The translations under genes were made by a program, and so were the position numbers. 64,000 nucleotides of DNA, taken from Octopus sinensis. Its lineage: Eukaryota. Under the pieces are notes generated by a model that was given only the letters and a program-made list of their open reading frames with translations, did not search any database and was not told the DNA's origin. The stretch is from assembly GCF_006345805.1 (NCBI RefSeq), contig NC_043009.1, positions 38,006,001-38,070,000 of the forward strand. The letters run 5' to 3'. This document shows, in pieces, positions 1 to 28,272 of the stretch (the stretch's first letter is position 1; every line of letters starts with the position of its first letter).

Positions 1-1170
1 CTATATAAAGCTCGTGTATGTGTGTTATAGGTCCAGCTATATAAAGTTTGTGTGTGTGTGTATTACAGTTACAATCAGCAAAATAGCACTGCAAAAATTT
101 AATTAAGAGATAGTATGTTTGTTCATTTAACACACATTTTTCTTGCAAAGCTAAAAGTTTTTGATGTGAGATTTTATTAGAGGCAGGATTTTAAAGTCAG
201 ATGCTCTTCCTGTCACCAACTCTTATTTGTTTTTCAGTTAAAAAAAGAGATCTCATTATTCCGCAGGTCTTTGAGAATAGAGAGCATCCAGTTGTAATGT
301 CAACATTTAGTGTTGGTTCACTCAAGTGGTGATAAGTAACTGATGCAAATATGATCTGACAATTGAAAACACGAAGAATTAATGGGATAGTTTCTTCAAA
401 TCTTCACACCAACAGAAGATATTTTTGATACTGGAAAATTCGAGTTCAGCTAAGAATAATGCGACTAAAAGAAGCCCATATGTGGATAAATTGAAGTTAC
501 TTTACATTGATGAAGCCGAAAAATGGACTTTAAAGAAAGAGCTTCAGGATCACTCTGAGGGCTGGAAACATATTTTAGAGACTTCAGAGAATGGAAGTCA
601 CTAACAGAGGATAAAAATGTCACAAGTATATGTTATTGGTAGAGATGACAACAATAGCATCATCATCATCATCACTACCACTATCAAATGTGTGTCTTCT
701 ATGCTGGCATGGGTTGGACAATTTGACAGGATATCACGAGTTGGAAGACTTGTTATGTACCAATATCTGCTTTGGTAAACGGAGGCTAAGGGAAGGAAGG
801 TATCCTCAAACTAGAATCATGGTCTGAATGCTTGTATCAAAGTGGATTCTGTTACAGGCACTTAAGATGCCAAATAGTGTTAAACTGGCCAATGGGCTAT
901 GTCTACCTCCGAGGTGAACCTAGATGGGATTTGAACACAGAATGCAAAGAGTCTAAACAAATACAATAAGTTATCTGGTCCAATGTTTTTACTGTTCTGC
1001 CAATCCACCCTCTTAAGTTGGTAACTGTAAATGGTGATCAAGTGTATGTAATTTTTGGTTTTTAGCACCAAATCAACCATGATTGTACAGGCCTATGAGC
1101 AAAGCTATTCTCACCATGACTACCCCATTGACATTTAGAAGTACGTAGGATATATATATATATATATATC

Positions 1171-1290
1171 ATCAGCATCATCTTTTAATGTCCGCTTTCC
1201 ATGCTAGCATGGGTTGGACGATTTTGATTGAGGGCTGGTGAACCAGATGGCTGCACCAGGCTCCAATCTTGATTTGGCAGAGTTTCTACT
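1171..1290 (-). mobile_element. RTE-type LINE/SINE 3' tail (family C1) fragment
   Basis: catcatc...tttaatgtccgctttccatgctagcatgggttggacg is the reverse complement of the tail at 26260-26315. A more decayed related tail lies at about 655-780. Confidence 0.8.
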
Positions 1291-1297
1291 GCTTTTC

Positions 1298-1328
<31 letters not shown>

Positions 1329-2328
1329 ATGAATTATATATCATATGAGTCAATTTTTTATTTAAGACATTTGGGTGTGATGTGAGAAACATAGCTGTTA
1401 CTTTTAGCAAGTCAAGTGAGAACACAGAGGCTTGTTTGTTGTTTCACAGCAAGAAGTACATACTGTCAGTGATTGTGAGCATGAACAATCTTCCACTATA
1501 ACCACAGTGAACCAAAGATCAATAAGTACAAGCATCCTCTTATGATCATGTTGCTATTGTTTCTTTATGCTACTCCAACCCCTCTGCTATTTGAAGTGAC
1601 GGAAGTAGTCATGTTGATTGAAATAATTAGATATGTTACCAGCAATAAATGAATGAATATTTTAACAAATGTTATTCAAATTAGTGTATGTTTTCACAAG
1701 TTACATTCTCCTTTTGGCATATTGACCATAACCAACACTCACTCACAGGCAAGTGTGACCTCGGAGAATGTTCCATGCTTTTGTTAATTATTTTAGGTGC
1801 TTCTATACTTGCAAGCTGACATAGATATCGTCTCAGCACCCCCTCTTATCCATGATCCAACAGAAAATCCAAAATGTGAGAGCAGGAGGGAGAGTGGGGG
1901 ACTGTACCAGTCATTGAGCTGATGCAGGCCTCTCTCAAATACTGCAAAGCATTCTGTTCAACACTCTGATGATTGCCAGTTTTACCACCTTATAAATTAT
2001 TCTATTAATATATGTGGCAACGATGTGAAACCTAAAGAGCTCAATATAACAAGAAATAAGAAAAGAATAAAGATTTAATGTCTACATCATTGCCTTAATT
2101 TTTGCTTTCCCATGCTTGGATGGACCAAGATGAGGTAGAGTTTTCTTTATGGTTAGATATCTTTCAAGATGTCAATCTCCATCAGTCTCCAGGCAAAGTA
2201 ATAATCTCATAATCTATTTATTGAACAACAAACAACCTTTACATGAATAACTGAAAACAAAACCAACACTGTATGAACAAGCCTTTTGTTTACAAAGGCT
2301 GCATTATACTTTAAGAAGCCCAGACATG

Positions 2329-2685
2329 ATCCTTATTTCTTTATTGCCCACAAGGACCTAAACACAGAGGGAACAAACAAGGATGAAAGGCAAAGTCGAC
2401 CTTGGCAGAATTTGAACTCAGAATATAACGGCAGACAAAATACCTATTTCTTTACTACTCACAAGGGGCTAAACACAGAAGGGACAAACAAGGACAGACA
2501 AACGGATTAAGTCGATTATATCGACCCCAGTGCGTAACTATTACTTCTTTAATCGACCCTGAAAGGATGAAAGGCAAAGTCGATCTCGGCAGAATTTGAA
2601 CTCAGAACATAATGGTAGACGAAATGCCGCTAAGCATTTCGCCTGGCGTGCTAACGTTTCTGCCAGCACCCTCACCTTATACCCC
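2329..2685 (-). mobile_element. SINE family B head-to-tail dimer (one full and one 5'-truncated, internally deleted monomer)
   Basis: Two copies of the family-B body (gtcgactttgcctttcatcctttcggggtcgat, reverse complemented). They are flanked by one 16-bp direct repeat, aagaagcccagacatg, at 2313-2328 and 2686-2701. Confidence 0.85.
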
Positions 2686-2899
2686 AAGAAGCCCAGACAT
2701 GTTTTTGTGATGGACTGCAAGAAAATGACATAATTAGCAGAGCCATTGTTTACAATCATGTGTAGATGAGAGAAATATGAACTCATTCATGCAAACACAA
2801 ACCTGTCTATTTAATGATATAATATATAGACTCTCATGTCATTAAACGATGGATGAGGATTTTGCAATTTCTTGCAGAACATTGGTCAATGGAACTACC

Positions 2900-3134
2900 T
2901 ACTCATTAATAATCAAATGTTTGTGTTTACATAAGTTCACTCCTGACATCAAACTGATATTGCTTGTAGTACAGGTGCACAGGTGTGCTATGTGTCAGAT
3001 GCCAAAATGATCACAGACCAAGTGAAATGAAGAGTTTTGCTTAAGAACACAATGCATTGTCTGGTCTGAGGACCAAACCTACGATCTAGTGATTACGAGC
3101 ACAGCACCCTAACCACTAGGTCATGTGCCTTCAC
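2900..3134 (-). mobile_element. tRNA-derived SINE family D, degraded
   Basis: The reverse strand reads tgtgaaggcacatgacctagtggttagggtg (A-box-like head), then tgtgttcttaagcaaaactcttcatttcac as in the copy at 24269-24528. Confidence 0.7.
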
Positions 3135-3176
3135 AATATATTTACATATATATACAATGGGCTTCTTTCAGTTTCT

Positions 3177-3409
3177 TATTTCTTTACTGCCCACAAGGGG
3201 CTACACACAGAGGGGACAAACAAGGACAGACAAATGGATTAAGTTGATTATGTCGACCCCAGTGCGTAACTGGTACTTATTTAATCCACCCCGAAAGGAT
3301 GAAAGGCAAAATCGACTTTGGCGGAATTTGAACTCAGAATGTAGTGGCAGACAAAATACTGTTAAGCATTTCGCCCTGCGTGCTAACATTTCTGCCAGCT
3401 CACCACCTT
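3177..3409 (-). mobile_element. SINE family B inserted into a family A SINE
   Basis: Full family-B sequence. An 18-bp direct repeat, gggcttctttcagtttct, lies at 3159-3176 and 3437-3454. The family-A head continues to about 3600. Confidence 0.9.
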
Positions 3410-4289
3410 CATACACAGAAGAAGGCTTTGGAAAACGGGCTTCTTTCAGTTTCTATCTAACAAATCCTCTCACAAGGCTTTGATAGGCCTTGGGCTATAA
3501 CATAAGACACTTACCCAAGGCACCATACAGTGGGACTGAACCAGAGACCAGATGGTTGGGAAGCAAACTTTTTAGCCATACAATCATGTCTGCACCTAAT
3601 TCCAGATAATTAAAACCAATTAGTTCAAATTCCGTTCTGCCTAATTACTTCTGTTACTGCGTCTCCGATGGATCTTTAGATGTTACACAGGTGTCTACAA
3701 TATAATTTCATAACGCTGCATATTTCATAGCATCGAAGCCTTTTATATGATATAATACATAGAAGTATGAAAGCTATTGTTAATTATGCAGATGTTAAAG
3801 CCATGCAATGACATTGTTTAAAGAGTTAAAAGTAGGGCAGCATTTGATAATAAATAAGCATTTATATATCCCTGAAGGTCTATTAGAAGAATAGCCAACT
3901 TAATAGGTACTTTCAATATTGCTGAATTTTAAAGTGTACCAACATAACACTTCTGTGAAACTATTAAAATACCTCAGAATCTTATAGATATAAATATATA
4001 AGTATGTGATGAACACTAAAATTAATGCAGACATGTTTAGCAATGGAAGTCCATTACCAGGAATTGTTATCTTTTCTGCCAATAATATCTCATCAGCGAC
4101 TCACTATTTTTTTTCTTCCTCTTTTGTAGAAGAATATATTTAAGAAAAAATGACAAAAAAGAAAAAAAAAAAATGAAAGAAAGCAAGTTGAATTCCAATT
4201 CATTATTCAGTTGGATGAAAAGAAATAGTTAGTTGGTGCAATTGAAAGCTAAAGTAGGTATATATGTCATTTGCCCATAACTACTATGA

Positions 4290-4398
4290 CAAGATATATA
4301 TATATATATATCTTATATCATATATATATACATATTATATCACATACATATACATATATATATGATATCACATATATATACATATATATATATTATAT

Positions 4399-4433
<35 letters not shown>

Positions 4434-4438
4434 TATAT

Positions 4439-4471
<33 letters not shown>

Positions 4472-4483
4472 TATATCACACAC

Positions 4484-4529
<46 letters not shown>

Positions 4530-4690
4530 CACACATGTATATATACATATATACATTATATCACACACATATATATATATACATATCATATATATATATA
4601 TATATATATTATATCATATATATATACTCATACATAAATACACACACACACATATATATATATTATACACATACACACACATTTACATAT
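4290..4690. repeat. Compound (TA)n/(CA)n microsatellite with a recurring TATTATATCAC spacer
   Basis: Direct reading; this is the source of the YI/HT-repeat ORFs. Confidence 0.95.
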
Positions 4691-4811
4691 ATATTGCCAA
4701 ATGAAAAACAAAATATCAGTCTGGATTTTTTCTTCTTTCTCATTTACAATAGCATATCGAAGATACTGAGTAAAGAAATTCACCAATGGCTCTCTCTCAT
4801 TTCCTGTTTAG

Positions 4812-4949
4812 GAAAACATCAATGGTTTTTAAGATTAGAAGAATGCAGCAGAAACGGGTATGTAAACAGTGGGGGTGATTGTTATAATAGATTGTCCCAG
4901 AATATGGAATATAGCAACTATGGGAATCTATATTCTTCCTATTGTATTG
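4812..4949 (+). CDS. Candidate internal coding exon, 138 nt, phase 1-1; product unknown (Cys/Tyr-rich, possibly extracellular)
   Basis: Acceptor ctctctctcatttcctgtttag, donor TTG|gtaagc. Open frame (G)KHQWFLRLEECSRNGYVNSGGDCYNRLSQNMEYSNYGNLYSSYCI(G). No partner exon identified. Confidence 0.4.
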
Positions 4950-5074
4950 GTAAGCATTCATTACATTGATAGACTGTCAGAGAAAAATATAGGACTGTAT
5001 ATGAACTGAATATCTTATTCACATGTCTAATAGGTAACACTATATTTGTGTGTATGTGCATGTGTGTATGCAGG

Positions 5075-5105
<31 letters not shown>

Positions 5106-6130
5106 ATATGCAGATATATATGTGTACATAAATACACACAGATGTATGTGCACATGTGTGTGTATGTATGTATGTATCATATATATGTATGTGTATACAT
5201 ATATGTGTGTGCATGTGTACATATATACATACATACATATATGCATGTTTGTGTGTAGTAAATGGCACTGAGGAAATTGTCCTAACAAAAGATTAAAGAA
5301 TCGGTGAGAGACATTCCAAAGAAGCCTGAAGATTTATGGTATTTGGCACAAGCATTGTGGTTGGTTAAGAAGCTTGCTTTGCAATCACATGTTTTCAAGG
5401 AAGTGTCTGCTACTATAGGCACTAATTGACTAATGCCTAATGCCTTGTGAGTGAATTTGATAGATGGAAACTGTGTGGAAGCCTATTTTATGTATATATG
5501 CATCTTTAGTGTCTGTGTTTGTCATGCTACTTTCTTAACCAATTGACAACTAGTGTTGGTTTATTTATGTCCTTATAACATAGCTGTTTACTGGAACAGA
5601 CTAATAGAATATGCAAAAGACTTTAAAACAGCGAAAGTACTGAGGTCAATTTATTTGAACTAAAACTCTTCAAAGTGGTGCTCCAGCATGGCCAGAGTCA
5701 AATGGCTGAAACAAGTAAAAGATAAAAGCTTCTATTCTGTGGTACAGTAGGTTCACTCATAATTGGAGCTTCAGATGGTGAGGAGGAAACAAGCATGGGA
5801 GGAGGGGGGGGGGCAAAGGGAAGCAAAATATTCCACTAGAATATCAGACTTTATCCAGAATGGATCCTACATTTGACAGAAGCTTTATGGTTCAAAATGA
5901 CCTCTTTTAACCCTCTTTAATAAGTTGCACAAACTCTGAAATAAGTGAGATTCATCATCATCATTTAATGTTTGCCTTCCATGTCACCATGAGTTGGACA
6001 GAGGGAGACAAATATATGATAAGGCCAAGAACAGTGTTGTGCTCCAGTCCACATTGTATAATTTGTCAGTGGTGGATAAGACACATTTGTGATCTGTATG
6101 GTCCCTGCCAAGCTAGTGAGACCCGTTTAG

Positions 6131-6500
6131 TCTGATATCATCATCATTTAATGTCCACTTTTCTTTGCTTGTATGGGTTGGATGGAATTTGTCGAGGCAA
6201 ATTTTCTTCAGCTGGATGCTCTTCCAGTCAATAACCCCCACCTATTTCCAGAAATGTTTCCCATGGAAGACTGGAAATGAACAATATCATTCATGTGATG
6301 ATGTTCATTTGTAACCATCATGTGATGCCAAGACAAGGGTACACACACACACACATTTCTGTCTACCAAATCCAATCACAAGATTTTAGTTGGCCCAGGG
6401 CTGTAGTAGAAGACATCTGCCCAATTTGTGGTATGGTGGGACTGAACCTAAACTATATGGTTAGTAAGCAGACTTCTCAACCACACAGCCATGCCTGCAC
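6131..6500 (-). mobile_element. SINE with family A head and RTE-type (C2) tail
   Basis: The A head (ccacacagccatgcctgcac, reverse complemented) is joined through a (CA)n tract to a tail beginning catcatcatttaatgtccac. Confidence 0.75.
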
Positions 6501-6704
6501 ATATAAAGGGTATTTGAAACTTTTCTGATATCTAAAAATTCCTTCAACTACATTTTTATTCCACAAACTAAATTTGTCTGATACTGATAAGAATTTAAGT
6601 AACACAGTTTAAAAAGACCAACAATAAAAAACACCCTCCCAATTAAAACTTTATGTAATCATAGTCTCTCAAGAGAAACTGGTAGAAATGCAACAGAAAC
6701 TAGT

Positions 6705-6736
<32 letters not shown>

Positions 6737-6895
6737 TGGTAACTTTGTCTCTAGGAGGAATTTTCATCGGTGTTAAATGAATTTTGTTGCTTACTGAGGT
6801 CAACAAACAGCTAACAGATGACAGGGTGTGATTCTAAGACGTAAGTAATTGACAGATACTAACTTAGAATTTAAATGTTATATCATAACAGCCAG

Positions 6896-6943
<48 letters not shown>

Positions 6944-7623
6944 GAATCTTTAGTAGCAGATGGAAGTGTGTTGTTTGGGTCAGTATGAGGCAGTGTGAAC
7001 AGAGAAGAACAAAAATATGAAAAGAAGAAAGATTGGATGTAAGAGAGAGAGAGAGAGAGACGGAGAGAGAGAGAGACGGAGAGAGAGAGAATGACATCTG
7101 TATCAAAACAGTACAAATTGTTTACATACATAAACTATAACAACATTTACCAGTCCTGGACTTCAATGACTAAGTACATAAAGCAGGAACCAGGAACAGT
7201 ACTAAATGTTATGTGAAACTGGCTACTCCCAGCCATACACACACACACACACACACACACACTGGTGTTGTTAACTTTTAAGGCAGACAAATGCCAATGA
7301 ATCACAACTAATGAAGATTGTTGCTAATTATCTTTGGTCTAGTCTTCCATCATCAGTCTAGTCTTTGATCCATAGTTTCGTCTTTAATCCTCGGTCTTGT
7401 CATTAATCCAGTCTCATCTTTAATCCACAGTCCTGTCTTTAATCCACAAACTAGTCGTTAAGTTGACTGATACCACAGTATCTTTTCTAAGTGTTGCTTC
7501 ACAATACAATTACTTACAACCATATTTACTTAATGCCCAGTAATGTGCCACCCATCATTAAGCCCCAAGGTTTGGCATCATACATGGTTTCCTGAAAAGC
7601 TAGCTTTATTTAATTCTTCTTAC

Positions 7624-7715
7624 CTTTTATTTCAGCCAATAATGCTGTAAATTCAGTAAAGTCAGAAGGAAGAATGTTGAATCAAACTTACCTAAAAGAA
7701 AATAAAAAAAGATGT
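7624..7715 (-). other. Candidate recursive splice site with a 68-nt RS/poison exon (7691-7624)
   Basis: Minus strand: aactaaatgacatctttttttattttcttttAG|GTAAGT at the 7692/7691 junction, and a downstream donor AAG|GTAAGA at 7624/7623. The exon has stops in all three frames. Confidence 0.45.
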
Positions 7716-8139
7716 CATTTAGTTATATTTTGGTTTTGGATTTGGTTTGCAAGGTTCTTTATATGAACTTATATGTTCAAGCATAATTTTTTTATCTCAG
7801 GAGGGTCATTATGCCAAGAATAAACACAGGCATTGATTCTATTTCACTTCTTTCATTACTGACTGAACAATTAATCAAACAGTTAATTGGTTAATAGTTT
7901 ACCAATTGACATATAAATAATAACAAACTAAAATAGAACCAGGGTGTGTGTGAATTTTATTATTAGCATAATGACCCTACCAGAATACCGCAAAATTAAG
8001 CAAAACATTTCATAAAAAATTAGAATTACCTCTATATCATATTTAACATAAGTGTCTCCAAAACAAACTTTTTCCTTTTATATTTTGGTGTACTTTGTGA
8101 ATAATGTCAACAAATTATATTAAGAGAGACATTTATATA

Positions 8140-8723
8140 CTGCAAAAACCCATGTAATTTACGTACTTTTTTCACAAAAACAAAAATAATCAGAGCTTGA
8201 GACAAGAAGACACTTTTGACCAATCAGAATTTTGTTTACATAATGAGTGATGGGTCACCTTCCTCTGTCGGTTGAGTAAAGTGTCACCCAAGCTGATGTT
8301 TATTGGTAAAATTAAACTTATTTTGCAACACTGGTGCATATTTATCAGCTTTGTTTTTGTTGGTAAGAATTATCAACAACTTTTCATGTGATCGTGATTT
8401 GAGAAGACACAGAAGTATGCTAAAGATTGGATATAATCTCTTGTGGGCAAAAGTTTATTATAAACAATACAAACACTTTGTAATTTAATAGCTTTCAATG
8501 AGATACCTGTTAAACAGAAATTATTTTTATTTAGTGAAAATTTAATAAAATCTAATCATAAGCAAGTGAAATTATGCTAAATACAACTAAATTGAAAAAC
8601 TTTTCCCCTGGCCATATCGGAAATTCTGAAAAATTTGGGGTGCAAATTTTACACGGACAGAAGCTTTTTTTCAACAATTTTTATCCTGAAAATCACCTGC
8701 GTAAATTACATGGGTTTTTACGG
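8140..8723. mobile_element. Tc1/mariner/pogo-type MITE
   Basis: TIRs of about 26 bp: ctgcaaaaacccatgtaatttacgta and tgcgtaaattacatgggtttttacgg. TA dinucleotides flank both ends (8138-8139, 8724-8725). Confidence 0.8.
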
Positions 8724-9031
8724 TATTTCAGTATCATTTACTAATTCACTTTTACATCCATTTTACCATGCGTGTGTAAGAGGATTACATATTATAGAGA
8801 TGTTTAACAGCCTGGAGCCTTTCCTGTTGCTTAAGAGAGCTCTCATCTCACTCGGATGATCTGTTGACCAGGAAATGTCAACAAATGACATCAACAGTCA
8901 AGCAGCTTAGTGTGGAATGTAAATGCTTACTACACACACACACACATACACATACAAATATATACTATACAAATATAAATATGCAAAAACATATATGCAC
9001 ACAGAAAAGCATATATATGGCATTTACCATA

Positions 9032-9570
9032 TACACTGAACCACAAAAGAAGTGCGATTTTTTTTCAAATGTCATTTTTATATGATAAATTCTGAAAATT
9101 TATTTCAAGGATGTAAGTGTAAATATTCCAAGACATGCTGGTTTATGGCTGAGACCCAAATTGCAGGTAATCTTTCAACTTTCCCTGAAACAAGATGCCA
9201 AAATGCAGCTGTGTTGAATACTGTGGGTGGCAGTCGCAAACAATTGTCATGAAAACCGAAATGCATGTACATCTTGTGAAGGTTATGGGTATAAAAATTG
9301 ACTTGAACTGCATTCCTGGCATTTATGATTTGGACACATCAGGTAGGACCCGATTGTTAGCAGCATAAAGAGAACAAGCTATCAGTCAATTGCAAGCAGA
9401 GCAGCATGCCCTGCAATAGCAATACGACAATGTCAACATCACTGCAGACCATACCCACAGTGGGTGCCCCCTGGGTGACCACGCCCTAGCAGGACCGCTT
9501 CATTCACCTGCAACACCTCCGTGATTGCTTCAGACCTGCTAGCGTGACAGCTCCAGGAACCCATCAGTAA
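9032..9570 (+). pseudogene. Tc1-like transposon 5' portion with a disabled transposase N-terminus
   Basis: TA|CACTGAACCACAAAAGAAGTGCG resembles a Tc1 terminus. The frameshifted translation TADHTHSGC/PWVTTP*QDRFIHLQHLRDCFRPASVTAPGTH matches the Tc1 linker motif DRPRSGRPRVTT..QDR.I.L.HLRDR. Confidence 0.85.
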
Positions 9571-12470
9571 ATACATATATGTACACACACACATTTATGA
9601 ACACACAACAGGCTTTGTACAACTTCCAATCTACCATATTCATTCATACAGCATCGGTTATAGTATGGAGCTATAGTAGAAGGTGCTGTGAAGTGGAACT
9701 GAACCCCAAACCATTTGGTTCAATAACAAACTTCTTAACTTACAGCCAATACCTGCACCCTATAGTCTGTAACTGTAAATAATTACTTCTTAATATAATA
9801 AACAATGCATAATTATGAAGACTTTAGTTTTAGAATTTCATTTCATACATTCCACAGTTTTAGATATATAATTTTATTATTTCTATGGTGCATCATTTAG
9901 GAACCAAACTCTTATACTTTCAACACAGAGAACTAATTAATGCAATAACTAATACACTGGAACCATTGATGTATATTTTGTCAGAATATTTCATAAAAAC
10001 AATTTAGACAAAACTTAAATCTATAGGAAGCGGATGATAATCTTAAACTGTAATAAAATTACTAAATAAATATATAAAAAAAAAAGATTTTTGTAACAAA
10101 TATTGCTGTGTGTCTTTGGAGGGAAATAAAATGAAGAAGGAGGAAAGAAGACATTTTATGTTGATGCCATTTAGCTGCAATAATAATTAAATTAATATTG
10201 AGTGACTAAGATAGCATTTTAGGTGACAAACAACCAAGAATTAAATAACTTGGCACCATATGTCTATAGAGTAAGTGTTTGGAAAATTTTGTTGTGTACA
10301 AAGAAACTACAATATATATTTATTTAAGAAATTTCAAATAAATAAATAAATAAATTAAGGTAATGACAGATTCTTTGGAAAGATTCTTTACATGATTAGA
10401 TTTTCAAGAATAAAGACAGACTCATGCTAACACGAAGTAATTAACTATAGTTTGAAGAATTTCCTGCAGATGTTATATAGTTGGAAAATGAAAATTAACA
10501 TTAAACTAAAAGAAAAAAAAAACTTTCGTTCTTCAACTTTGTGGCACATATGTAGGAATATGTAGGAATATTAAAGACAAAAAGAAGAATCATATATGTA
10601 ACTAATTAAAACTGAAAAAGAAAATATAAAAATAAAAAACTATGGAAATGAAGAGAGAAAAAAACCCTTGAAATTTACTCGAGGCATAAACGAAGAAGAG
10701 TTAAGGTTGAATATGATGAACAGCAGATAAATGAAATTTCAGGAAATAGATAAGACTAAAACAATAATAAATAAAAAATAAAATAGAAACATGTTAAAAT
10801 TAAATAGTGTGAGATTCTAAATAATACTACTAATGCAGATAATTAGTTACATTTTCAATAATTAACAAAAATAAAAGAAATTCTCAAAAAAAAAAAAACC
10901 GAGGAAAAAAAAAGAAGAGAGATAATTCTGGAGCGCAGCAAGAAACCAGAGGAAAGGATATAGCAAAGATATATTTTTGTAAAAATTCATTAGTGACAAA
11001 AAGAAGTTAGCAGCATGTGACATCATATTGCTTCTGCTATTTGGTTAGCAGCTGAAATATGTCAGTTGTTTAAACACTACTTAACCAGTTCACTAGAAAA
11101 GATTTGTGCAAAAGCAAACAGGAATGGAATTTCCAAAGTCAGTTTTTTTCCTAAATCCCACCCAGCAACTTGCTAGAAGTTGCTAAACATTTTAATATCA
11201 ACATTAACGTTGCTGCTGTGGACATGGCCAAACCAATGTACTTTCTTAATCTTATGGTTTTTTAAAAAATTCTTTTTAGTTTCTTCTTTGCATTTTACGG
11301 TAAACAATTCAAAAACACAAGAATTTAAGTAGAGCAAAGAAAACTAGTTGTGTGAATAGCCAGGGTTAATTAAAGAGGACCGAGCACAGAAGCAAGAAAT
11401 GATTGCAGGTGTTTTAAATTCTTCTTGTGTAAGTGCATATGTTTTTATAGGTTATACAAGAGAATGAAGAGCAGTATCTATGACTACTGTATGCTCTCAA
11501 AGACTGTGGATATTGGTGAGGTTAATACACAACACAAACAGCTCTAGCAAACATGTTAGTTTTGGAATGAATTCTTGCTAAAGGCACTCAAGAAAAAGAA
11601 TGTGATGGTCTTAAATCACAGAGTGTTAAATCTACCACCTAACATGGGAGAGAAGAAGCAAGAATAAAAGGAAAAGGGGGTGAAAAATCTCAGGAATGGG
11701 AAAATCTAATTAAAAATTTTTTTTATTGTCCTATAATTTTTTCAAAATTATTTTTTTGTTTAAAATTGCAAATTGGTAAAACTGATTGTTTTCATAAACT
11801 AACATCTAAGGTAAACTGCCAACTGAAATTAAAATTCAATTTCAAAAAAGAAAAACATTTTTTTTTAGTTTTTGTGATTAAAATTTGATTTTGCTTTGTA
11901 TATTAAATTTTTAATTAGGGCTCAAATTTCAATGAGTATTTTGAAAATTTTTTTTGTTTTCTTCTTTAATATTTTTTTTAAAAACAATTTCATTCTTCCT
12001 ATTTGATTTCAGTTAATGAAAAAAATACAAAACTATCGAGAAGCTGACAAATCATGAAATGAAATTCCTATTGCTAAAAACAATAAACAAATAAATGAAA
12101 ACGGTTTTGAGTAAAAACTACTTTAGAATTGTCTCAGTTTTTTAATATGTTTTATTATTAGCTTGTTAAAGGAAGAAGAACAGAAATTTGGTGAGTAATG
12201 AGTGGGGGAGTTTTTGCGGAGATTGTGATGTCTAAACAATTTCAAATAAACCGATAAGTGGGTACGGCTGTGTTGTAAGAAGCTTGCTTCCTAACCATGT
12301 GGTCTTGGGTTCAATTCTTGGGTGTCTTCTACAATAATCTTAGACTGACCATAGCCTTGTGTGTGCATTTGGTAGATAGAAGAATTTTGTTGTTTGTATG
12401 TGTAGGTACCGGTGTCTTAACATCACATGATTGTTGTAAATGACTAGCACTATAATAATCTTTTCTACTC

Positions 12471-12873
12471 TAGGCACAAGGTCTTAAATTTTGGGGGAGG
12501 GGGCAGTCAATTAGATCAATCCCAGTATGCAACTGGTACTTAATTTATCCCCAAAAGGATGAAAGGCAAAGCTGACCCTGGCGGAATTTGAATTCAGAAT
12601 GTAAAGACAGATGAAATACCGCTAAGCATTTTGCTTGGCATGCTAACGTTTCTTATTTCTTTATTGCCCACAAGGGGCTAAACATAGAGGGGACAAACAA
12701 GGACAAACGGATTAAGTTGATTATATCGACCCCAGTGCGTAACTGGTACTTATTTAATTGACCCGAAAGAATGATGGCAAAGTTGACCTTGGCGGAATTT
12801 GAACTCAGAACGTAATGGCAGACTGCTAAGCATTTCGCCCGGTGTGCTAACATTCCTGCCAGTTTGCTGCCTT
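12471..12873 (-). mobile_element. SINE family B head-to-tail dimer
   Basis: A full copy (12656-12873) is fused at aaagaaata/agaaacg to a 5'-truncated copy (12471-12655). Confidence 0.85.
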
Positions 12874-12899
12874 ACTAGCACTATAATAATACAAGTAAT

Positions 12900-13075
12900 G
12901 TACAGTATTCTGTGAAAAACATGTCTGGCCATGGAGAAATATTATCTTGCTTGGAAATAGATGAGGGTTGGCAACAGGAAGGGCACCCGACTGTAGAAAA
13001 TCTGGCTGCACAAATTGCATTCAACCCATGCAAGCATGAAGAAGTGGACATTAAATGAGGATAATGATGAGAGGA
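12900..13075 (+). mobile_element. RTE-type 3' tail (C2)
   Basis: ggttggcaacaggaagggcacccgactgtagaaaa...ccatgcaagcatgaagaagtggacattaaatgaggataatgatg. Confidence 0.75.
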
Positions 13076-13787
13076 CATTGTAATAATGGTGACACACACA
13101 GACGATAAGATGTAACAAGGACAAGAGATTCAAAAAAGACTTTTTGATGAAAATACAAGAAGCAGAAGGCCATAATTACTAGTTCTTCAAGTGAAGTGAA
13201 TTATATGGTGTAATTTAAGACCAGTGATAATAATTTTTATAATATATTTGAAATTAAAGTCTTGCAGTCTTTCAGAGAAAATCCTTGTTTATTTTTGTCA
13301 TTTTTATTATTATTTTTTTTTTTTTGGTGTCTTATCATTTTAACTTTGATTTCCTTCTTAAAATAGTTCTAACAAGCAATAACCACAAAACAGTATGGTG
13401 TTTGTATAATTTTAAAATTTAATTCTGTTTCGATTTTTTTGCTTTATTTGACTAGCTTCCTTTAACTATTGAAGTTTGTGAAACTATACACCAGAAACAA
13501 ACATTTGGATTATTATTATTATCATTATTATTATTATTACCACTACTATTATTTTTTTTTTTTTTGCTTTATATGACATTGTGTGGCAAGAAGGTTTATT
13601 CAGGCAAATAATAGTACATTTAAACAAGAATCTGTTAGAACTTGGAATAAATAACTTGAGTTTAATATTACACAATGTTGGAACACTGGTTTATAGCCGA
13701 ATACACTTTCATTATCAAAAGAGGCCAATGACGGTATTTTGTGCCATGCACACAAGAAATTTTCACTTCTTGCAAGACAGCTCCATT

Positions 13788-13845
13788 TCAGCAGCACTCT
13801 TGTCTTAACACATGCTCTGTGTTTATTTTCTTTCCATTAGCATTC
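13788..13845 (-). CDS. Candidate terminal coding exon ending ...NANGKKINTEHVLRQECC*
   Basis: Acceptor tctatcttatccttattttcag; only one frame stays open beyond a few codons. AATAAA at 13600-13595 lies about 190 nt past the stop. Upstream exon not found. Confidence 0.3.
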
Positions 13846-13975
13846 CTGAAAATAAGGATAAGATAGACGGCCTGGTCTGTCTGAGCTTCAGTGAGCATAC
13901 CAATGTTAATGAATAAGACGTTTTGTCGAGAAGGAAATAGATAGGAATCTTATACTATGTGTTGAAAATCTTATT

Positions 13976-14061
13976 TCAATATTGCTTCAATTTCACCATT
14001 ATATAAATATATACACACACGAGTGTATGTGGGTGTGTGCGTTTATATATATATGTGTGTG

Positions 14062-14109
<48 letters not shown>

Positions 14110-14181
14110 TACACACATGCATGTGTGCAACAGTATTTATATATATATATATATACATACACACATGAATGCGTGCAAGAG

Positions 14182-14217
<36 letters not shown>

Positions 14218-14249
14218 CACACACATACACACATGCATGCGTGCAAGAG

Positions 14250-14284
<35 letters not shown>
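13976..14284. repeat. (TA)n/(CA)n array with a three-copy higher-order unit (catgcatgcgtgcaagagtattta(TA)n)
   Basis: Direct reading. Confidence 0.9.
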
Positions 14285-14287
<3 letters not shown>

Positions 14288-15079
14288 ATGTTTGGAGTAG
14301 GATGGGCAGAAAATTGAGAATAAGAAGCAATGATGAAAATTAAACTATGAAAATAAATGATAAAATGGAAAAAAAGAATTAAAAAAAAAACATTGAAAAA
14401 TTTATTCTTTTTTTGTTTTATTTTTGCAAAAAAATTTTTTTGTTGTTGCGATTATTTTTATTTGAAAAGTTTATTGTATACAAATTGTATTAATTCTTAA
14501 CAGTCATGGAAATATTGATTTAAATAATTCAGATAAATATCAATTGTTTAAAGAGAGCTGAGTTAAAGCAGAATTTAAGAGACTACTACAGAAAACAGAA
14601 AACAGGAAAAAAAAAAAAAGGATGAAGAGAAAAATTCAGAAAAAAATAGAAGAGAATGGGGAAAATTTTATAAGAACTAGGATTAAGAAACGTAAGTCAA
14701 GATACTTATTTACACTAAACTTAAAAGGAAAAAAGGTCAGTATGATCTCGGAAAACATTTAAGAGGAAAAGCTATGTGAAATGGAAACTAGATATCGTGG
14801 TGTAGAGATAGTGTCATAGAACTCTGCAACAAAGTATCAATGATTGTAAACATGAAGATAAGAAATCTTTTGCCAGAAGGCAAGATTTTTAAAAGATCTT
14901 TGTTATACTGATTGTGGTCATAACCATAGAAGAATGGTAAACGAAGAACGTTTCTTCAACCTTTATTTTTATTCAATTCTTAACCACTGGGGCATGATAT
15001 CGGTCATTGTATTTGCTAATCAAAATGCTAGAATATATTGTTCCGTTTCTATCACAGACTTGAGAAATATATATATATG

Positions 15080-15117
<38 letters not shown>

Positions 15118-15210
15118 CATACATAAGTATGTGTGAGTACATATGCACATGAGTGTATGCAAGTAGGCATATGGGCATATATATATTAATGTGTGTGAAT
15201 GTGCACATTA

Positions 15211-15249
<39 letters not shown>

Positions 15250-15785
15250 CTTTTTAGGAAAGTCTGTCCATTAACTTAATGAAACTTAACTTATAGAATA
15301 TAAAGGTGGTACTACTACCATCACCAACACCACCACCACCACCAACAACAACTGCTGTCACTACTACTACTACCAGCACCACCACCACCATAATTGCTGC
15401 CATCATCTCCATCACCACCACCGTGTTTATCTTAATGATGATATGTCTCTAACACAATGAAAGGAAGATTTTATTACAAAATGAAGAACGGAGAATACGT
15501 GAACAAAATAAGGAAACAATATTAGAAGGATAAATATTTTCAAGAAAGTCTTTAATTTAATATGAATGAGAGAAACATATTTCAGAGAGAGGGGGGACGA
15601 GGGAGAGGAGAGAGAGAGAGAGAGAGAAAAAACTATTTGGGAGATATTCAAATTATATCTAACATATAGTTTGAAACATGGATGCAAGAACAATACGTTT
15701 CCACATTCTTCCTTACTTTTTTTTACCATTTTATTTCATCATTGAAGAATTATATGTTAAACTGGAAGTTTATTATTTCCAAGCT

Positions 15786-15832
<47 letters not shown>

Positions 15833-16753
15833 GAACATTTACATGTAAGGTGACTCAGTACTGGCAGAGAGTAGATGTTTTACTTGTTTCAGTCACTGTA
15901 CTGTGGTCGTGCTGCGGTAAAACCCGGCAGAGTTTAGTCAAACAAACTGACCCCAGTATTTATCCAGGTTAAAGTCTGGTACATATTCTAATGCATTTCT
16001 TTTGCTGAACTAGAAGACACCCAAGAATTGAACCCAAGACCATATGGTTAGGAAGCAAGCTTCTTACAACAAACCAATGCCAGTTTTCAAGCGATGGTGG
16101 GGCACAAAACAAAATGATACCTACATACATACATTTCATACATGGGATTGCACCTAGAAAGTTGCTCTCTGAGGCACAAATCCAGGCAAAGGTTGATACA
16201 GCTTGTCACCAGTGTCATCCCAACTCATTTCTATAGCTGAGTGAACTGGAACAATGTGAAATAAAGTATCTTGCTCAAGAACACAACACGCGGCCCAGTC
16301 TGAGAATCAAACTCACTACCTCATGCAATCCCATGGTCATTCATAACTGAAGAGGGTCTTTACTCTTTTTACCCTTTATTATATATATATATATATATAT
16401 ATAAAGGGTAAAAAGAGTATATATATATATGAATGCGTGCGTGCACACACATGTATATATATGATGGGCTTCCACAGTTTCTGTCAACCAAATTTACTCA
16501 TAGAGCATTGATCAGCCCGGGGATACAGTAAGACACTTGCCTAAGGTGCTGTGTGGTAGGACTGAACCTGAAACCACATAATTGTAAAGTGCTCTTCTTA
16601 GCCACACACCCACGCTTGTGCCTAAAATCAAATTTATTATAACTTTTGTGTCAAGTTTTGCCTGACAGCTTATTCAATCAGCCAGCATGAAATTTAAAAT
16701 AAATCATTGAAGAATTACTAATTTCTTATTGCTGTATTCCACATTATCTAAAT

Positions 16754-17014
16754 CGGTGGTTTCCAACCATTTTTTGCCTATGATCCTCTGTGATTTCTAT
16801 TTTACTTGGATGGTTCCTCAAAGCCAGTCAATGTCTAAAAAATCCTATTATATTTCTATAAGTAGTTATTATTAGAAATTATGTAATAAATTGCTGAAAT
16901 ATTTTTAGTGTATTGTGGAAATATAAGTAATTTATTGCACATAAATTTTAACAACAAAATCTTACATGAACCCCCACTCACCAGGGTCACATGGACCCTA
17001 GTAGAGAACCGCTG
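16754..17014. mobile_element. hAT-type MITE
   Basis: Ends cggtggtttccaacc and agtagagaaccgctg; 8-bp TSD atctaaat / ttctaaat (7 of 8 match). Confidence 0.8.
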
Positions 17015-18387
17015 TTCTAAATTTCAACATTTTCAAGGCAAGGTTTTGGAATAACTATCACTAGCTTATGGAGAAGATAAAGGGCAAGGAATTGAGAAGC
17101 TTTGGTTCTTTTTTGTCTTTAGCTTTCCTGTGTTTTGTACATTGAAAAATGGTTCTGAAAGAATTCTTTTGTCCCTCTAGAACTAAATTGTTTTTGTTTT
17201 TTTTATATATGTATCTTGCTTCTCCATTCTGTGTCCCTTTCCTTCCCCATGGTGTAGTCATAGTTATTCTAAACCTCTGCTGTTTGCAATTGCTGTCAAT
17301 TGATCAATAAAATGGCAACACTCAGACTACTTTAGAGCAACGTTGGTTTAGTTTAAAAACTCTTTTACAGGAACAAACACAAGACGTAACATGCTGGATC
17401 AAAAGAATTCTCATTAAGTCTTGTATGGAAAATTAATCTATCTAAATACAGTCGCTGGTAAAAGGAAGCAAAGGGTTTGAATTAACATTCTAGAATCGCA
17501 GCCCCATAGTCTTCAAGGCACTGAAAAGAGCAAACAAATACAAACAAAATGGTAATTAATGATAAAGAAGATAAAAAAATTGAATTCCACTCTATGACTA
17601 AGTAAGATAGGTGGAAGCATGACTGGCTGTGTGGGTAAGAGGTTCAATTCATCATAGTGCAGTTCAGGTTTGATTAGGTTTGATTTTGCTATTGAAAGGT
17701 TACATTGTTTGGTCTTTGTGCAGGCGTTCCTGTTTTGAAGTGACTATCCAATTTAAAAAAAAAAATCTCTTGCTTTTTTTTTTTTTTACTTTTACTTGCT
17801 TCAGTTATTGGACTGTGGCCAAGCTGGGGCACTGCCTTAAAGGATTTAGTTGAATAATCAATCCCAGTTCTTTTTGTTTTTCTTTTGAAAGCCAAGTATT
17901 TATTTTATCGGCCTCATTGCCAAGCAACTAAGGTAAAGGGACTTAAACATAAACATAACAAACAGGTTGTCAAGAGGTGTGCATGCAAGGCTGTACTGGT
18001 GGTGTTGGGGGTAATACACAAACACACACACATGTATATATGATGGGCTTCACGAGTTTCCATCTACTAAATTCACTCAAGGCATAGGTTGGCGATAGAA
18101 GACACTTGCTCAAGGTGCTGTGCAGTTAAACTGAACCCGAAACCATGTAATTACAAAGTGAGCTTCTTAACCACATAGCCATGCCTGAGCTCATAGAAAT
18201 GTTTTGGACATTTGATAATTATTTTGTAGTTACTATCTCAAAGTTATATTTGCACTGTAGTTCTAGCAAAAAAGTAACTTTGTAACTCCACACAGATTAA
18301 TAAAAAATATATTATTTGACCCGTTTGTTACCATATTTCTGTTGAAATACACAATCTTTGTTTGAAATAATTTCTGAACGTTGTCGA

Positions 18388-18630
18388 TGCCAGCCCCCCC
18401 CCCCCCCCCGCTCTGACTGGCTCCTGTGCTGGTAGCACTTAAAAAAGCACCATCTGAACATGGCTGATGCCAGTGCCGCTTGACTGGCTCCCATGCTGGT
18501 GGCATGTAAAAAGCACCCACTACACTCTTGGAGTGGTTGGCATTAGGAAGGGCATCCAGCTGTAGAGACATTGCCAGATCAGATTGCAGCCTGGTGCGGC
18601 CTCCTCGCTTGCCAGTCCCTAGTCAAACAA
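18388..18630 (+). mobile_element. RTE-type tail family C1 (two internal units of about 65 bp)
   Basis: gactggctcctgtgctggtagcac..., then ggttggcattaggaagggcatccagctgtag. Confidence 0.8.
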
Positions 18631-20979
18631 CTTGACCTCTTGCTTTCCAAGATCCCAGATGAACTAATATCAAGGCAAGAAATTCAAAAGAGGGCTGTGT
18701 TATAGAACTCCCTCCTTTACCAAAAGCCAACCTCATAGAATTGGCCAATTAAAAAGTGATTAAACTGGCGGTGCCCTAGCATGGCTACAGCCTCACAAGT
18801 GAAACATATAAAAGAATACATACATGCATACACACACACAAATACATATATATATATACACACACACACACTTATGTAAATATATATATATATATATACA
18901 TACACACACACACTTATGTAAATATATATATATATATATATACATACACACACACACAACAGGCTTCTGTCTACAAAATTCATTCACAAGGCTTTGGTTG
19001 TTCTGGGCCTATAGCAGAAGACATTTACCAAAGTTACACACACTAGAACTGAACTCAGAATGACATGGCTATGAAGTGAACTTGAAGAAGAAACTATAAA
19101 GAAGAAGAAAAAAAAAACTTGATGAAGTAACCATATATATATATATATATATATATATAAATTTTTTTTTCTGTCTTTAAATCCAATAGAGACTTTATAG
19201 CAGTAAAATTCCCGCTTGAGGAGTTACGTCATGTTAGGTTGTTTTGTGTTCTTGGATTGAATCATTATTATTGTCGAAACCTCCAGGAATGAAAATAAAT
19301 TACACTGTTGCTTAGAAAGAACATAACACGAGGTGGGGGTGGGATGGACAAAATTTAGAACCCAATTCATGTATTTTCAGGTTAGATAAACTTTAATACT
19401 CTATCCATTTAACGATATGGAATTTTATCCCTACCCGCCCTTAACCTTCCCCATTTCTTACATCATTTCTAGTCAGAAAATTCCATTCTGATATTGAAAA
19501 GTTCATTAAAATAGCTGAATATTATTCAGCAATCCATAAAAAACACATTCATTCATACACACACATACATACTCATACATACACACACATAACAAAAAAA
19601 AGATAAGGAAAAAATGTGTAAATATTGACAGATTAGAGCTGGATTTGTGGCAGTGAATTATTCTAAAGAGAGGTAGAAAAAAAGAAGGGAGATAATTATT
19701 AAACAATAGGGTATCTATCCTGAGTTATACACAGATGAGTTGTATATAATAAACTGAAATACATGACAAGCATATTAATGTATATTTTCCTGAGTAATCA
19801 ATCATATATAGTGTATAATGATATAGGTATGTGTATGGAGATACACATACACACATAGATAGATGGATACACGTACATACACTCACACATATATATGAAT
19901 GAATGAATGAATGAATGTATGTATGATATGAATATACTATAAAGATGGCTATAGCATAAAAGGAAATGTATTTTCAAGCAGTAGTTTTCCAGAAGATTTA
20001 GTTAGCACTGAAGAATACATTAGCTCCTTATCTACACTGAGAAAATAACCAACACGATATGTAGCTATAATGTAGTCCATGATGGAAAGAACTTCTTTCT
20101 CTCCCTGCTCATTACAGGCTCACTGCAACTATGAAACAGATAAGAGGGAATTTTACATCCCAGCAGTTATCTAAATGTGAGTTAAGTTGCTGGAACGGAG
20201 TAATATGAACACAAAGATACTTGCTCAAATAATAAATATATTTTTATTAGGCTGAATGAAGTTACAAAGTTATTTTAATAGCTAGAATCACTATGCAAAT
20301 ATAACATTGAGGAAATAACTGCAAAATAAGTATCAAATTTTCTACAATTGACAACGTTTATGAACATCTTGTGAAAGCAGTCGTAAAAAACCATCTCTTC
20401 TTTTTCCCAGAGAAACTTTCTATAAATGGATATTCTCTGCAAAATGGAAAAGCTTTGGCTAAAGACTGAACAAAACAACTTTTGAATAGATTATTTTAAT
20501 GGTCAGAATAACACAGTTTGATCACATTTAGATTGTTAGTGGTAAAAGAATAACAGTCTGGAAAGAAGAATGGTAAAGGAGTTTATGTGAGAAGGTCTTG
20601 CAGATAATAACATTCCCTCTTGCAATGCATATTTATAAATGTTAATCATATCCATCCTTTTAATGAACTGATTTTTGGTTAGCAGCAGATTCCAAAAATA
20701 AAAAAAAGGAATACTAAAAATATTTGAAAAGATCTTTTATCACTGGAATTATTTCCGAAATTGTTGAGTTTAAGAGAGCAAACTTTGGCTGCCAATCATT
20801 CTTATAGAAACAGAGATATATTTCTACTTTCTTTGTTGCAGCGTACTGGAAAGTTAAAGCTGAACATATGCGTACATGAACAACACACACACACACACAC
20901 ACACACACACCACACACACTCTGAGGAATTTAATTGCTGTTTTATGTGTAGTGATGTTGTCATGAAATTAAAGCTTTAA

Positions 20980-21159
20980 CCCTTTAGCATTTAAGCCGGT
21001 CAGATCAGGCTTCTCACACCCACCCTACAATGCACTTCTAAAAATATGCATTTTCTTATAGCTTCAAAATTTTGATGATGTAAATGTTCGATTAATTTAA
21101 AACAATATGAATAAATAAATAGGCATTACACTTGACAGAGTAACCTGAATGCTAAAAGG
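20980..21159. mobile_element. piggyBac-type (TTAA) MITE, family 1
   Basis: TTAA|CCCTTTAGCATT ... AATGCTAAAAGG|TTAA, with TTAA at 20976-20979 and 21160-21163. Confidence 0.85.
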
Positions 21160-21163
21160 TTAA

Positions 21164-21984: not shown

Positions 21985-22092
<108 letters not shown>

Positions 22093-22099
22093 CAAATGT

Positions 22100-23945: not shown

Positions 23946-24143
23946 TCTCAGAAACTGTGCCAGTCCACCTTCTTTAAAAATGTAACAGTAAATTAAATTA
24001 AATTGATTTTTTGCATAAACAAATGACCAAAAATTTTAGTGGGAGGGAACAAATATTCATATGAACCCCAGTATTGGTCTGATCCTTTATTTCTATTGAC
24101 CCTAAGAGGATTAAAGGCAAAGTTGATCATTGTGTGATTTGAA

Positions 24144-26992: not shown

Positions 26993-27039
<47 letters not shown>

Positions 27040-28239: not shown

Positions 28240-28272
<33 letters not shown>

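What the first reader, a model, noticed from the sequence alone, without database searches (positions are those of the whole stretch)
7512..7720. Candidate recursive splice site with a poison RS-exon in a dense minus-strand splice-signal cassette
Seen in the sequence (minus strand): branch-like CTAAAT/TGAC, a roughly 20-nt pyrimidine tract and TAG, followed immediately by a perfect donor GTAAGT (7691). A second strong donor, AAG|GTAAGA, lies 68 nt later (7623), and the intervening exon has stops in all three frames. A further acceptor (7593-7592) and a third consensus donor GTAAGT (7517) follow within about 180 bp. Established knowledge: AG|GT junctions followed by a cryptic stop-containing exon are the architecture of recursive splicing in long Drosophila and vertebrate neural introns. 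Inference: this may be a cephalopod recursive-splicing element about 42 kb downstream of the candidate first coding exon. I am not aware of such sites being characterised in octopus.
Basis: partly seen in the sequence, partly recalled or inferred. Interest (0 to 1): 0.75.

Follow-up and report, generated by a model that had tools for sequence, protein, structure and literature searches.

The report
Candidate recursive splice site, unproven
A textbook-looking "recursive splice site" motif, with a short stop-filled cryptic exon behind it, really is in the sequence and is rarer than chance predicts for one window. Nothing available here can show that it is transcribed, spliced or conserved.

Summary
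The core motifs are present on the minus strand at the stated coordinates. A 19-nt pyrimidine tract and TAG are fused to GTAAGT (G at 7691). A second strong donor, AAG|GTAAGA, lies 68 nt later (7623), and the interval has stops in all three frames.

By a rough splice-site matrix the fused site is the best of 334 AGGT sites in the window (11.7 bits; next best 6.3). Markov nulls give 0.005-0.05 such sites per 64-kb strand. Adding the second donor gives about 3e-4 per strand-window. That is unusual for one window, but tens of chance cases are expected in a 2.7-Gb genome.

The "further acceptor" (7592) and "third donor" (7517) are ordinary background.

The site lies in a 48-kb CpG-depleted block (o/e 0.33, against 0.95 at 50-58 kb). 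[quoted passage not shown] The block has no recognisable coding domain.

No RNA data or orthologous DNA could be reached. Recursive splicing is a well-formed, plausible reading (about 0.4), closely rivalled by a chance, unused motif. If real, it is a new member of a known kind.

The parts
7714..7722 (-). Branch-point-like CTAAAT (7722-7717) and TGAC (7717-7714). The TGAC adenosine is at -24 from the splice junction.
   Evidence: The 64 nt upstream of the acceptor AG contain no other AG.
7694..7712 (-). Polypyrimidine tract TCTTTTTTTATTTTCTTTT (18 of 19 Y), with TT at positions -5/-6.
   Evidence: The TT feature is found in 196 of 197 Drosophila ratchet points.
7692..7693 (-). Acceptor AG of the candidate ratchet point.
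   Evidence: acceptor score 8.4 bits, rank 4 of 3203 AG on the minus strand.
7686..7691 (-). Ratchet-point donor GTAAGT, directly abutting the acceptor AG.
   Evidence: It is the only AGGTAAGT in 128 kb. The composite scores 11.7 bits, the best of 334 AGGT sites.
7624..7691 (-). Candidate cryptic RS-exon of 68 nt, with stops in all three frames. It has a stop after 9 codons if entered in phase 0.
7618..7623 (-). RS-exon donor AAG|GTAAGA.
   Evidence: 6.8 bits, rank 9 of 3870 GT. It is equal in strength to the ratchet-point donor.
7605..7614 (-). Overlapping poly(A)-signal hexamers ATTAAATAAA, 9 nt after the second donor.
   Evidence: This is not significant on its own: one search counts 70 AATAAA and 53 ATTAAA on the minus strand of 1-48 kb, about one hexamer per 390 nt.
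7592..7594 (-). The 'further acceptor' CAG. It is weak and at background level.
   Evidence: -5.3 bits, rank 1259 of 3203.
7512..7517 (-). Third GTAAGT, in the poor exon context GTT|. It is ordinary.
   Evidence: 1.7 bits, rank 155 of 3870.
49351..49461 (-). It is unsupported.
   Evidence: sequence; no true homologue; no Pfam domain.
1..48000 (.). CpG-depleted block (o/e 0.33), probably a germline-methylated gene body. It contains the candidate site.
   Evidence: Interpretation from PMC9476566.
50001..58000 (.). CpG-undepleted island (o/e 0.95). Its left edge meets the candidate exon.

Best explanation
The proposed element is a minus-strand intronic ratchet point with a cryptic RS-exon, inside a long intron of a gene whose body covers at least 1-48 kb.

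Proposed mechanism (inferred, not shown):
1. U2AF and U2 recognise the strong tract and AG at 7692. U1 binds the donor at 7623. Together they define the 68-nt exon 7691-7624.
2. The upstream exon is spliced to G7691, removing the first roughly 40 kb of intron.
3. This rebuilds a consensus donor, exon|GTAAGT. That donor is then used to splice to the next acceptor, so the cryptic exon is discarded and leaves no trace in mRNA.
4. If the 7623 donor wins instead, the 68-nt exon is included and brings in a premature stop, giving a non-productive isoform.

Shown here: the motifs, their rarity, and the long CpG-depleted context with no recognisable coding domain. Inferred: transcription of the minus strand and every splicing step.
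For: - Motifs are exactly as described.
- The composite AG|GT site is the best of 334 in the window, by 5 bits.
- Nulls give 0.005-0.05 per strand. The runner-up scores sit at the null median, so the null is calibrated.
- The acceptor ranks 4th and the two donors 9th and 10th on the strand. The joint chance is about 3e-4 per strand-window.
- TT at -5/-6, as in 99.5% of fly ratchet points.
- A 68-nt stop-filled exon with its own donor matches the published architecture: a cryptic RS-exon of about 50 nt, generally out of frame (PMC8605326).
- A 64-nt AG-free zone and a TGAC branch candidate at -24.
- The site lies in a 48-kb CpG-depleted block (o/e 0.33 against 0.95 next door). [quoted passage not shown]
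- None of 230 ORFs of at least 55 aa has a Pfam domain, which is compatible with one very long intron.
Against: - There is no evidence that the minus strand is transcribed. Counts of poly(A)-signal and donor hexamers show no strand asymmetry.
- The candidate upstream exon has no homologue among 1.84 billion representatives, nor among proteins of 227-721 aa in the 5.8-billion set.
- The ratchet-point donor is no stronger than the RS-exon donor (6.6-6.8 against 6.8 bits). In flies the ratchet-point donor usually wins by being stronger.
- Tens of equally good chance sites are expected genome-wide.
- In octopus, methylated gene bodies mark broadly expressed trafficking, translation and metabolism genes, and neuronal functions fall among the unmethylated genes. 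The neural-gene framing is therefore not favoured.
- Site-specific recursive splicing is rare in some animals with long introns, such as mouse and lungfish.
- Conservation is untested.
Confidence: 0.4

Rival explanations
1. A chance juxtaposition in non-functional DNA. A T-rich run happens to sit in front of the single AGGTAAGT expected per strand, with another GTAAG nearby. The T-rich run could be the complement of a degenerate A-rich retroposon tail on the plus strand (CTAAAAGAAAATAAAAAAAG, 7694-7713). The site would be unused, either because the minus strand is not the sense strand or because the spliceosome ignores it.
For: - AGGTAAGT occurs at the rate composition predicts.
- Pyrimidine tracts cover 1-2% of minus-strand positions, 4-7 times more than on the plus strand.
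- The order-5 Markov null reaches 0.05 per strand.
- Exon-like acceptor-donor pairs of similar combined score occur on the plus strand too, at 20118-20176 and 30522-30960.
- With about 84,000 strand-windows in a 2.7-Gb genome, roughly 8-84 such cassettes arise by chance.
- The strand is undetermined and the upstream exon is unsupported.
Against: - The joint probability is about 3e-4 per strand-window.
- The site exceeds every other AGGT in the window by more than 5 bits.
- No second copy of 7300-8000 exists in the window, so there is no positive sign of a repeat origin.
Confidence: 0.38
2. An ordinary expressed cassette exon (7691-7624) that merely happens to begin with GTAAGT. It could be a 5'-UTR exon, a lncRNA exon or a regulated poison exon. 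It would be included in some mature transcripts rather than serving as an obligatory, always-skipped intermediate.
For: - A top-4 acceptor and a top-9 donor 68 nt apart are what a real short exon looks like.
- The two donors are of equal strength, so inclusion is predicted to compete well.
- Expressed RS-exons are known in flies and are numerous in mammals.
Against: - Only about 3e-4 of exons would start with GTAAGT by composition.
- There is no open frame.
- There is no transcript evidence.
- By the published model, an exon starting with a consensus donor is itself subject to recursive splicing, so this rival overlaps the main reading.
Confidence: 0.12
3. A cryptic last exon, that is an intronic polyadenylation site. 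The strong acceptor at 7692 would be followed about 80 nt later by ATTAAATAAA (7614-7605). The two U1-binding donors would act to suppress premature cleavage (telescripting).
For: - Overlapping poly(A) hexamers lie 9 nt after the second donor.
- Cryptic last exons in long introns are described in the literature (PMC7997972, listed).
Against: - One search counts 70 AATAAA and 53 ATTAAA on the minus strand of 1-48 kb, about one hexamer per 390 nt. One within 100 nt therefore has a probability of about 0.2.
- No downstream GU-rich element was examined, and there are no 3'-end data.
Confidence: 0.05

Closest known systems
Drosophila intronic ratchet points with cryptic RS-exons (Ubx, kuz, Bx; Hatton 1998, Burnette 2005, Duff 2015, Joseph 2018/2021, Pai 2018)
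   Same: - (Y)n-TT-N-AG|GTAAGT junction.
- Prominent pyrimidine tract, with TT at -5/-6.
- A short (about 50-nt) stop-containing cryptic exon closed by its own donor.
- Location tens of kb into a region with no recognisable coding domain.
   Different: - No RNA evidence and no conservation data.
- The host gene and strand are unknown.
- The ratchet-point donor is not stronger than the RS-exon donor.
- The organism is presumed to be a cephalopod, where the mechanism has not been described.
Vertebrate recursive splicing via RS-exons in long genes (Sibley 2015; Blazquez 2018)
   Same: An RS-exon defined by a downstream 5' splice site, a premature stop if included, and competition between the rebuilt donor and the RS-exon donor.
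   Different: - Vertebrate high-confidence cryptic sites are few (nine noted definitively).
- The published cases were reported mostly in brain-development genes. Here the CpG-depleted context points rather to a broadly expressed, methylated gene.
Exonisation of antisense retroposon tails (Alu-type cryptic acceptors; own knowledge)
   Same: On the other strand, the pyrimidine tract reads as an A-rich tail-like run directly following unique sequence.
   Different: No repeat body could be identified. The region is single-copy within the window, and no repeat library was available.

Membership tests
Intronic ratchet point + cryptic RS-exon (recursive splicing) | [quoted passage not shown] | tested here: met
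   TCTTTTTTTATTTTCTTTTAG|GTAAGT scores 11.7 bits, the best of 334 AGGT sites. The null gives 0.005-0.05 per strand.
Intronic ratchet point + cryptic RS-exon (recursive splicing) | TT at -5/-6 of the acceptor (196 of 197 fly ratchet points) | tested here: met
   (T at 7697 and 7696).
Intronic ratchet point + cryptic RS-exon (recursive splicing) | Short cryptic exon (about 50 nt) closed by a downstream donor | tested here: met
   68 nt. Donor AAG|GTAAGA ranks 9th of 3870.
Intronic ratchet point + cryptic RS-exon (recursive splicing) | Cryptic exon is non-coding, out of frame or stop-containing | tested here: met
   stops in all three frames.
Intronic ratchet point + cryptic RS-exon (recursive splicing) | Ratchet-point donor is stronger than the RS-exon donor, so that the exon is skipped | tested here: inconclusive
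   6.6 bits (6.8 if rebuilt with GGG| from the candidate upstream exon) against 6.8 bits. Both have 7 bp of U1 complementarity. The matrix is a rough one.
Intronic ratchet point + cryptic RS-exon (recursive splicing) | Lies in the sense strand of a long (over about 10 kb) intron of an expressed gene | tested here: inconclusive
   - A CpG-depleted 48-kb block suggests a methylated gene body.
- No Pfam domain in 230 ORFs.
- The strand is undetermined, and the candidate upstream exon has no homologue.
Intronic ratchet point + cryptic RS-exon (recursive splicing) | Strong evolutionary conservation of the acceptor|donor junction | not testable with these tools
   No cephalopod DNA or ORFs could be reached: all came back empty.
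Intronic ratchet point + cryptic RS-exon (recursive splicing) | RNA evidence: junction reads into the site, saw-tooth coverage, lariats from the rebuilt donor | not testable with these tools
Retroposon-tail-derived cryptic acceptor | The tract is the complement of the A-rich tail of a repeated element | tested here: inconclusive
   No second copy of 7300-8000 in the window, and none of the three interspersed families covers it. Only 64 kb could be searched.

The most novel reading that the evidence does not exclude
Site-specific recursive splicing of the Drosophila type (a consensus ratchet point plus an always-skipped cryptic exon) operates in cephalopod long introns, and this locus is one instance. 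It would be the first described in Spiralia. It would imply that the ratchet-point and RS-exon architecture is ancestral to Bilateria and is reused wherever introns become very long.
Probability: 0.35. Interest if true: 0.55.

Novelty: new member of a known kind. Interest (0 to 1): 0.33.

Why it matters
Recursive splicing has been demonstrated in flies and vertebrates. No paper in the searchable library links it with octopus, and the one paper that mentions cephalopods is on another topic.

Cephalopod genomes have very long introns, so they are a natural place to ask whether long-intron removal uses conserved ratchet points or only stochastic multi-step splicing. A validated site would extend a known mechanism to a third major animal lineage and give a concrete locus for assays.

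It would not change the understanding of the mechanism itself. As it stands, the locus is a motif-based prediction, so its present value is as a testable candidate only.

Tried and rejected
- **Repeat origin.** Self-BLAST of 7000-8500 against the window found only microsatellite hits. Three interspersed families were mapped and none covers the site.
- **Gene model, by domain.** 230 stop-to-stop ORFs of at least 55 aa were scanned against Pfam and gave nothing above chance.
- **Gene model, by homology.** The candidate exon-1 ORF was searched against 1.84 billion representatives. The three hits are summed weak matches to tandem-repeat proteins, not homologues. The same exon, X-padded to 412 aa and scored over residues 1-40, found no candidate in the 5.8-billion set.
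- **Gene model, by splice sites.** An exon scan requiring strong sites and an open frame found no convincing coding exon on either strand.
- **Orthologous DNA, for conservation.** Ten window ORFs are not in the protein collection. An interspersed-repeat (SINE-like) ORF gave no hit. A 30-mer across the junction is absent from metagenome contigs and genome contigs.
- **Strand of transcription.** Poly(A)-signal and donor hexamers, compared with composition-matched permutations, show no asymmetry. The A/T skew (minus strand T-rich) is the same inside and outside the CpG-depleted block, so it is uninformative.
- **Non-coding RNA.** Rfam and tRNA scans of the window found nothing. That also excludes a U1-like gene behind the plus-strand ACTTACCT.

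Full report
**1. Observation**

- The sequence runs ...AACTAAATGACATCTTTTTTTATTTTCTTTTAG|GTAAGTTTG. The AG is at 7693-7692 and the G of GTAAGT is at 7691.
- AAAAG|GTAAGA follows, with its G at 7623.
- TTTTCAG|G is at 7594-7591.
- GTAAGT is at 7517-7512.

A script confirmed further details:
- The 68-nt interval 7691-7624 has stops in all three frames, and so does the 74-nt interval 7591-7518.
- The tract 7712-7694 is 18 of 19 pyrimidines, with T at -5 and -6.
- The 64 nt before the acceptor AG contain no other AG.
- The A of TGAC lies at -24.

**2. Is it more than chance?**

The octamer alone is not. AGGTAAGT occurs once in 128 kb, and base composition predicts about one per strand. GTAAGT itself is not enriched: there are 9 on the minus strand of 1-48 kb, against 12.3 for composition-matched permutations.

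The composite is unusual. I used a rough position-weight matrix for a metazoan acceptor tract plus the intronic half of a donor. The frequencies come from my own knowledge, not from a trained cephalopod model.
- The site scores 11.7 bits, the best of all 334 AGGT sites on both strands. The runners-up score 6.3 and 4.7.
- Sequences simulated from Markov models of the minus strand reach that score 0.005 (order 1), 0.015 (order 3) and 0.05 (order 5) times per 64-kb strand.
- The observed runner-up scores sit at the null medians (5.5-7.4), so the null looks calibrated.
- An independent estimate agrees: about 1.2% of minus-strand positions follow a tract of at least 17/18 Y, times about 1 AGGTAAGT per strand.

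With full matrices:
- The acceptor ranks 4th of 3203 AG.
- The fused donor ranks 10th of 3870 GT, and the 7623 donor ranks 9th.
- A donor that strong within 20-150 nt has a probability of about 0.02.
- The core cassette therefore has a chance rate of roughly 3e-4 per strand-window (range 1e-4 to 1e-3).

That is notable for one window. It still implies on the order of 8-84 chance cases in a 2.7-Gb genome, and this one was picked for its looks.

Two elements of the description are background. The acceptor at 7592 ranks 1259th of 3203, and the donor at 7517 ranks 155th. Exon-like acceptor-donor pairs of comparable combined score also occur on the plus strand.

**3. What surrounds it**

- The region 7300-8000 is single-copy within the window.
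- Three interspersed repeat families with about 13, 20 and 4 copies were mapped. None covers the site.
- A 177-bp element with 23-nt terminal inverted repeats lies at 7802-7978. A 19-nt tandem array lies at 7316-7461.
- No tRNA or Rfam family is present in the window.
- None of 230 stop-to-stop ORFs of at least 55 aa has a Pfam domain above chance.
- A scan for open-frame exons with strong splice sites found nothing convincing on either strand.

At this level the window is non-coding.

**4. An independent contextual signal**

CpG observed/expected is sharply domain-structured, while the GpC control stays near 1:

| Region | CpG o/e |
|---|---|
| 1-48 kb | 0.33 |
| 6-8 kb (around the site) | 0.17 |
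| 50-58 kb | 0.95 |
| 58-64 kb | 0.50 |

Interspersed repeat copies inside the depleted block keep o/e 0.6-1.1. The unique sequence there is therefore even more depleted than the block average.

In Octopus bimaculoides, fewer than 10% of CpGs are methylated. [quoted passage not shown] If the window is cephalopod, which I could not verify, the 48-kb depleted block is most simply a germline-methylated gene body.

This supports 'inside a transcription unit'. It does not give the strand: the edge could be the 5' end of a minus-strand gene or the 3' end of a plus-strand gene.

**5. The upstream exon and the strand**

The candidate exon-1 ORF found no true homologue.
- Among 1.84 billion representatives, the three hits are summed weak matches to tandem-repeat proteins.
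- No protein of 227-721 aa in the 5.8-billion set shares even three 5-residue words with it.
- It has no Pfam domain.

Strand indicators were uninformative.
- Poly(A)-signal and donor hexamers, compared with composition-matched permutations, show no asymmetry.
- The minus strand is T-rich, but equally so inside and outside the depleted block.

**6. Conservation and RNA evidence**

Neither could be obtained.
- Window ORFs are not in the protein collection.
- An interspersed-repeat (SINE-like) ORF has no relatives there.
- A 30-mer across the junction is absent from the metagenome and prokaryote-genome collections.

**7. Comparison with the known system**

Published fly ratchet points have these properties (PMC8605326; Duff et al. 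preprint; PMC6110457):
- They are juxtaposed acceptor|donor motifs with a prominent tract.
- They have TT at -5/-6 in 196 of 197 cases.
- They sit in introns of at least 11 kb.
- They have an ultraconserved junction.
- They require a cryptic RS-exon of about 50 nt with its own donor. [quoted passage not shown]

Here, every feature that sequence can test is met, with one exception. The donor competition comes out even: 6.6-6.8 against 6.8 bits, with 7 bp of U1 complementarity each. That predicts appreciable inclusion of the stop-containing exon rather than clean skipping.

The features that actually establish membership were inconclusive or untestable: a sense-strand long intron, conservation, and junction, lariat and saw-tooth reads.

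Of 160 fly ratchet points predicted from motif plus conservation, 91 were later verified. Here conservation is missing. It is also unknown whether cephalopods resemble flies (over 500 sites) or vertebrates, where only nine fully suppressed intronic sites were noted definitively and such splicing is reported as rare in mouse brain and not ubiquitous in lungfish.

**8. Verdict**

Weighing a chance rate of tens per genome against an unknown number of true sites, I put about 0.4 on a functional recursive-splicing cassette. The alternatives are:
- about 0.38 on an unused chance motif;
- about 0.12 on an ordinary expressed non-coding or poison exon that happens to start with GTAAGT;
- about 0.05 on a cryptic last exon using the ATTAAATAAA at 7614-7605.

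No paper in the searchable library links recursive splicing with octopus, and the single paper that mentions cephalopods is on another topic. If real, the site would be a new member of a known kind in a new lineage. That would interest splicing specialists but is mechanistically expected. The cheapest decisive tests are the genome annotation, strand-specific total RNA-seq, alignment to other Octopus genomes, and a genome-wide sense-versus-antisense count of the composite motif in long introns.

Noticed in passing
window 1-48000 vs 50001-58000 vs 58001-64000: CpG observed/expected falls into sharp domains: 0.33, 0.95 and 0.50, with the GpC control near 1. This looks like a germline-methylated gene body abutting an unmethylated block of about 8-10 kb. 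A local exception occurs at 38-40 kb (0.78).
   Followed up: partly
window 7802-7978: A 177-bp MITE-like element with 23-nt terminal inverted repeats (AGGGTCATTATGCCAAGAATAAA / TTTATTATTAGCATAATGACCCT, 91% complementary). It lies about 110 nt upstream of the candidate site in the minus sense. The whole 7802-7978 stretch is weakly palindromic.
   Followed up: no
window 7316-7461: A degenerate 19-nt tandem array (CAGTCTCGTCTTTAATCCA-like, about 5-7 units), immediately downstream in the minus sense of the motif cluster. It is followed by (AC)n at 7237-7262 and (AG)n at 7042-7090.
   Followed up: no
window, e.g. 2436-2652, 3177-3384, 12654-12848, 34254-34482, 38150-38650, 50992-51203, 61908-62095 (family A); 21189-21513, 39713-40023, 48051-48385, 56054-56375, 59000-59450, 60855-61164 (family B); 18413-18628, 26027-26318, 62600-63000 (family C): Three interspersed repeat families of SINE-like size, at 70-88% identity and in both orientations. 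Copies keep CpG o/e of 0.6-1.3 even inside the CpG-depleted block, with slightly fewer CpGs there than in the undepleted block. ARAGORN finds no tRNA-like heads.
   Followed up: partly
window, whole; e.g. 57585-58625, 27711-27866: Polypyrimidine tracts are 4-7 times commoner on the minus strand than on the plus strand (2.3% against 0.6% of positions at 16/18 Y or more). This is largely due to GA-rich low-complexity arrays on the plus strand.
   Followed up: no
window 7605-7614 (minus): Overlapping poly(A)-signal hexamers ATTAAATAAA lie 9 nt downstream of the second donor. This would allow a cryptic-last-exon reading, but it is not significant by itself.
   Followed up: partly
window 35634-35912: A 117-bp tandem repeat, 2.4 copies at 98% identity, within a broader zone of 21/42-nt A-rich tandem arrays at 35264-36142.
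   Followed up: no
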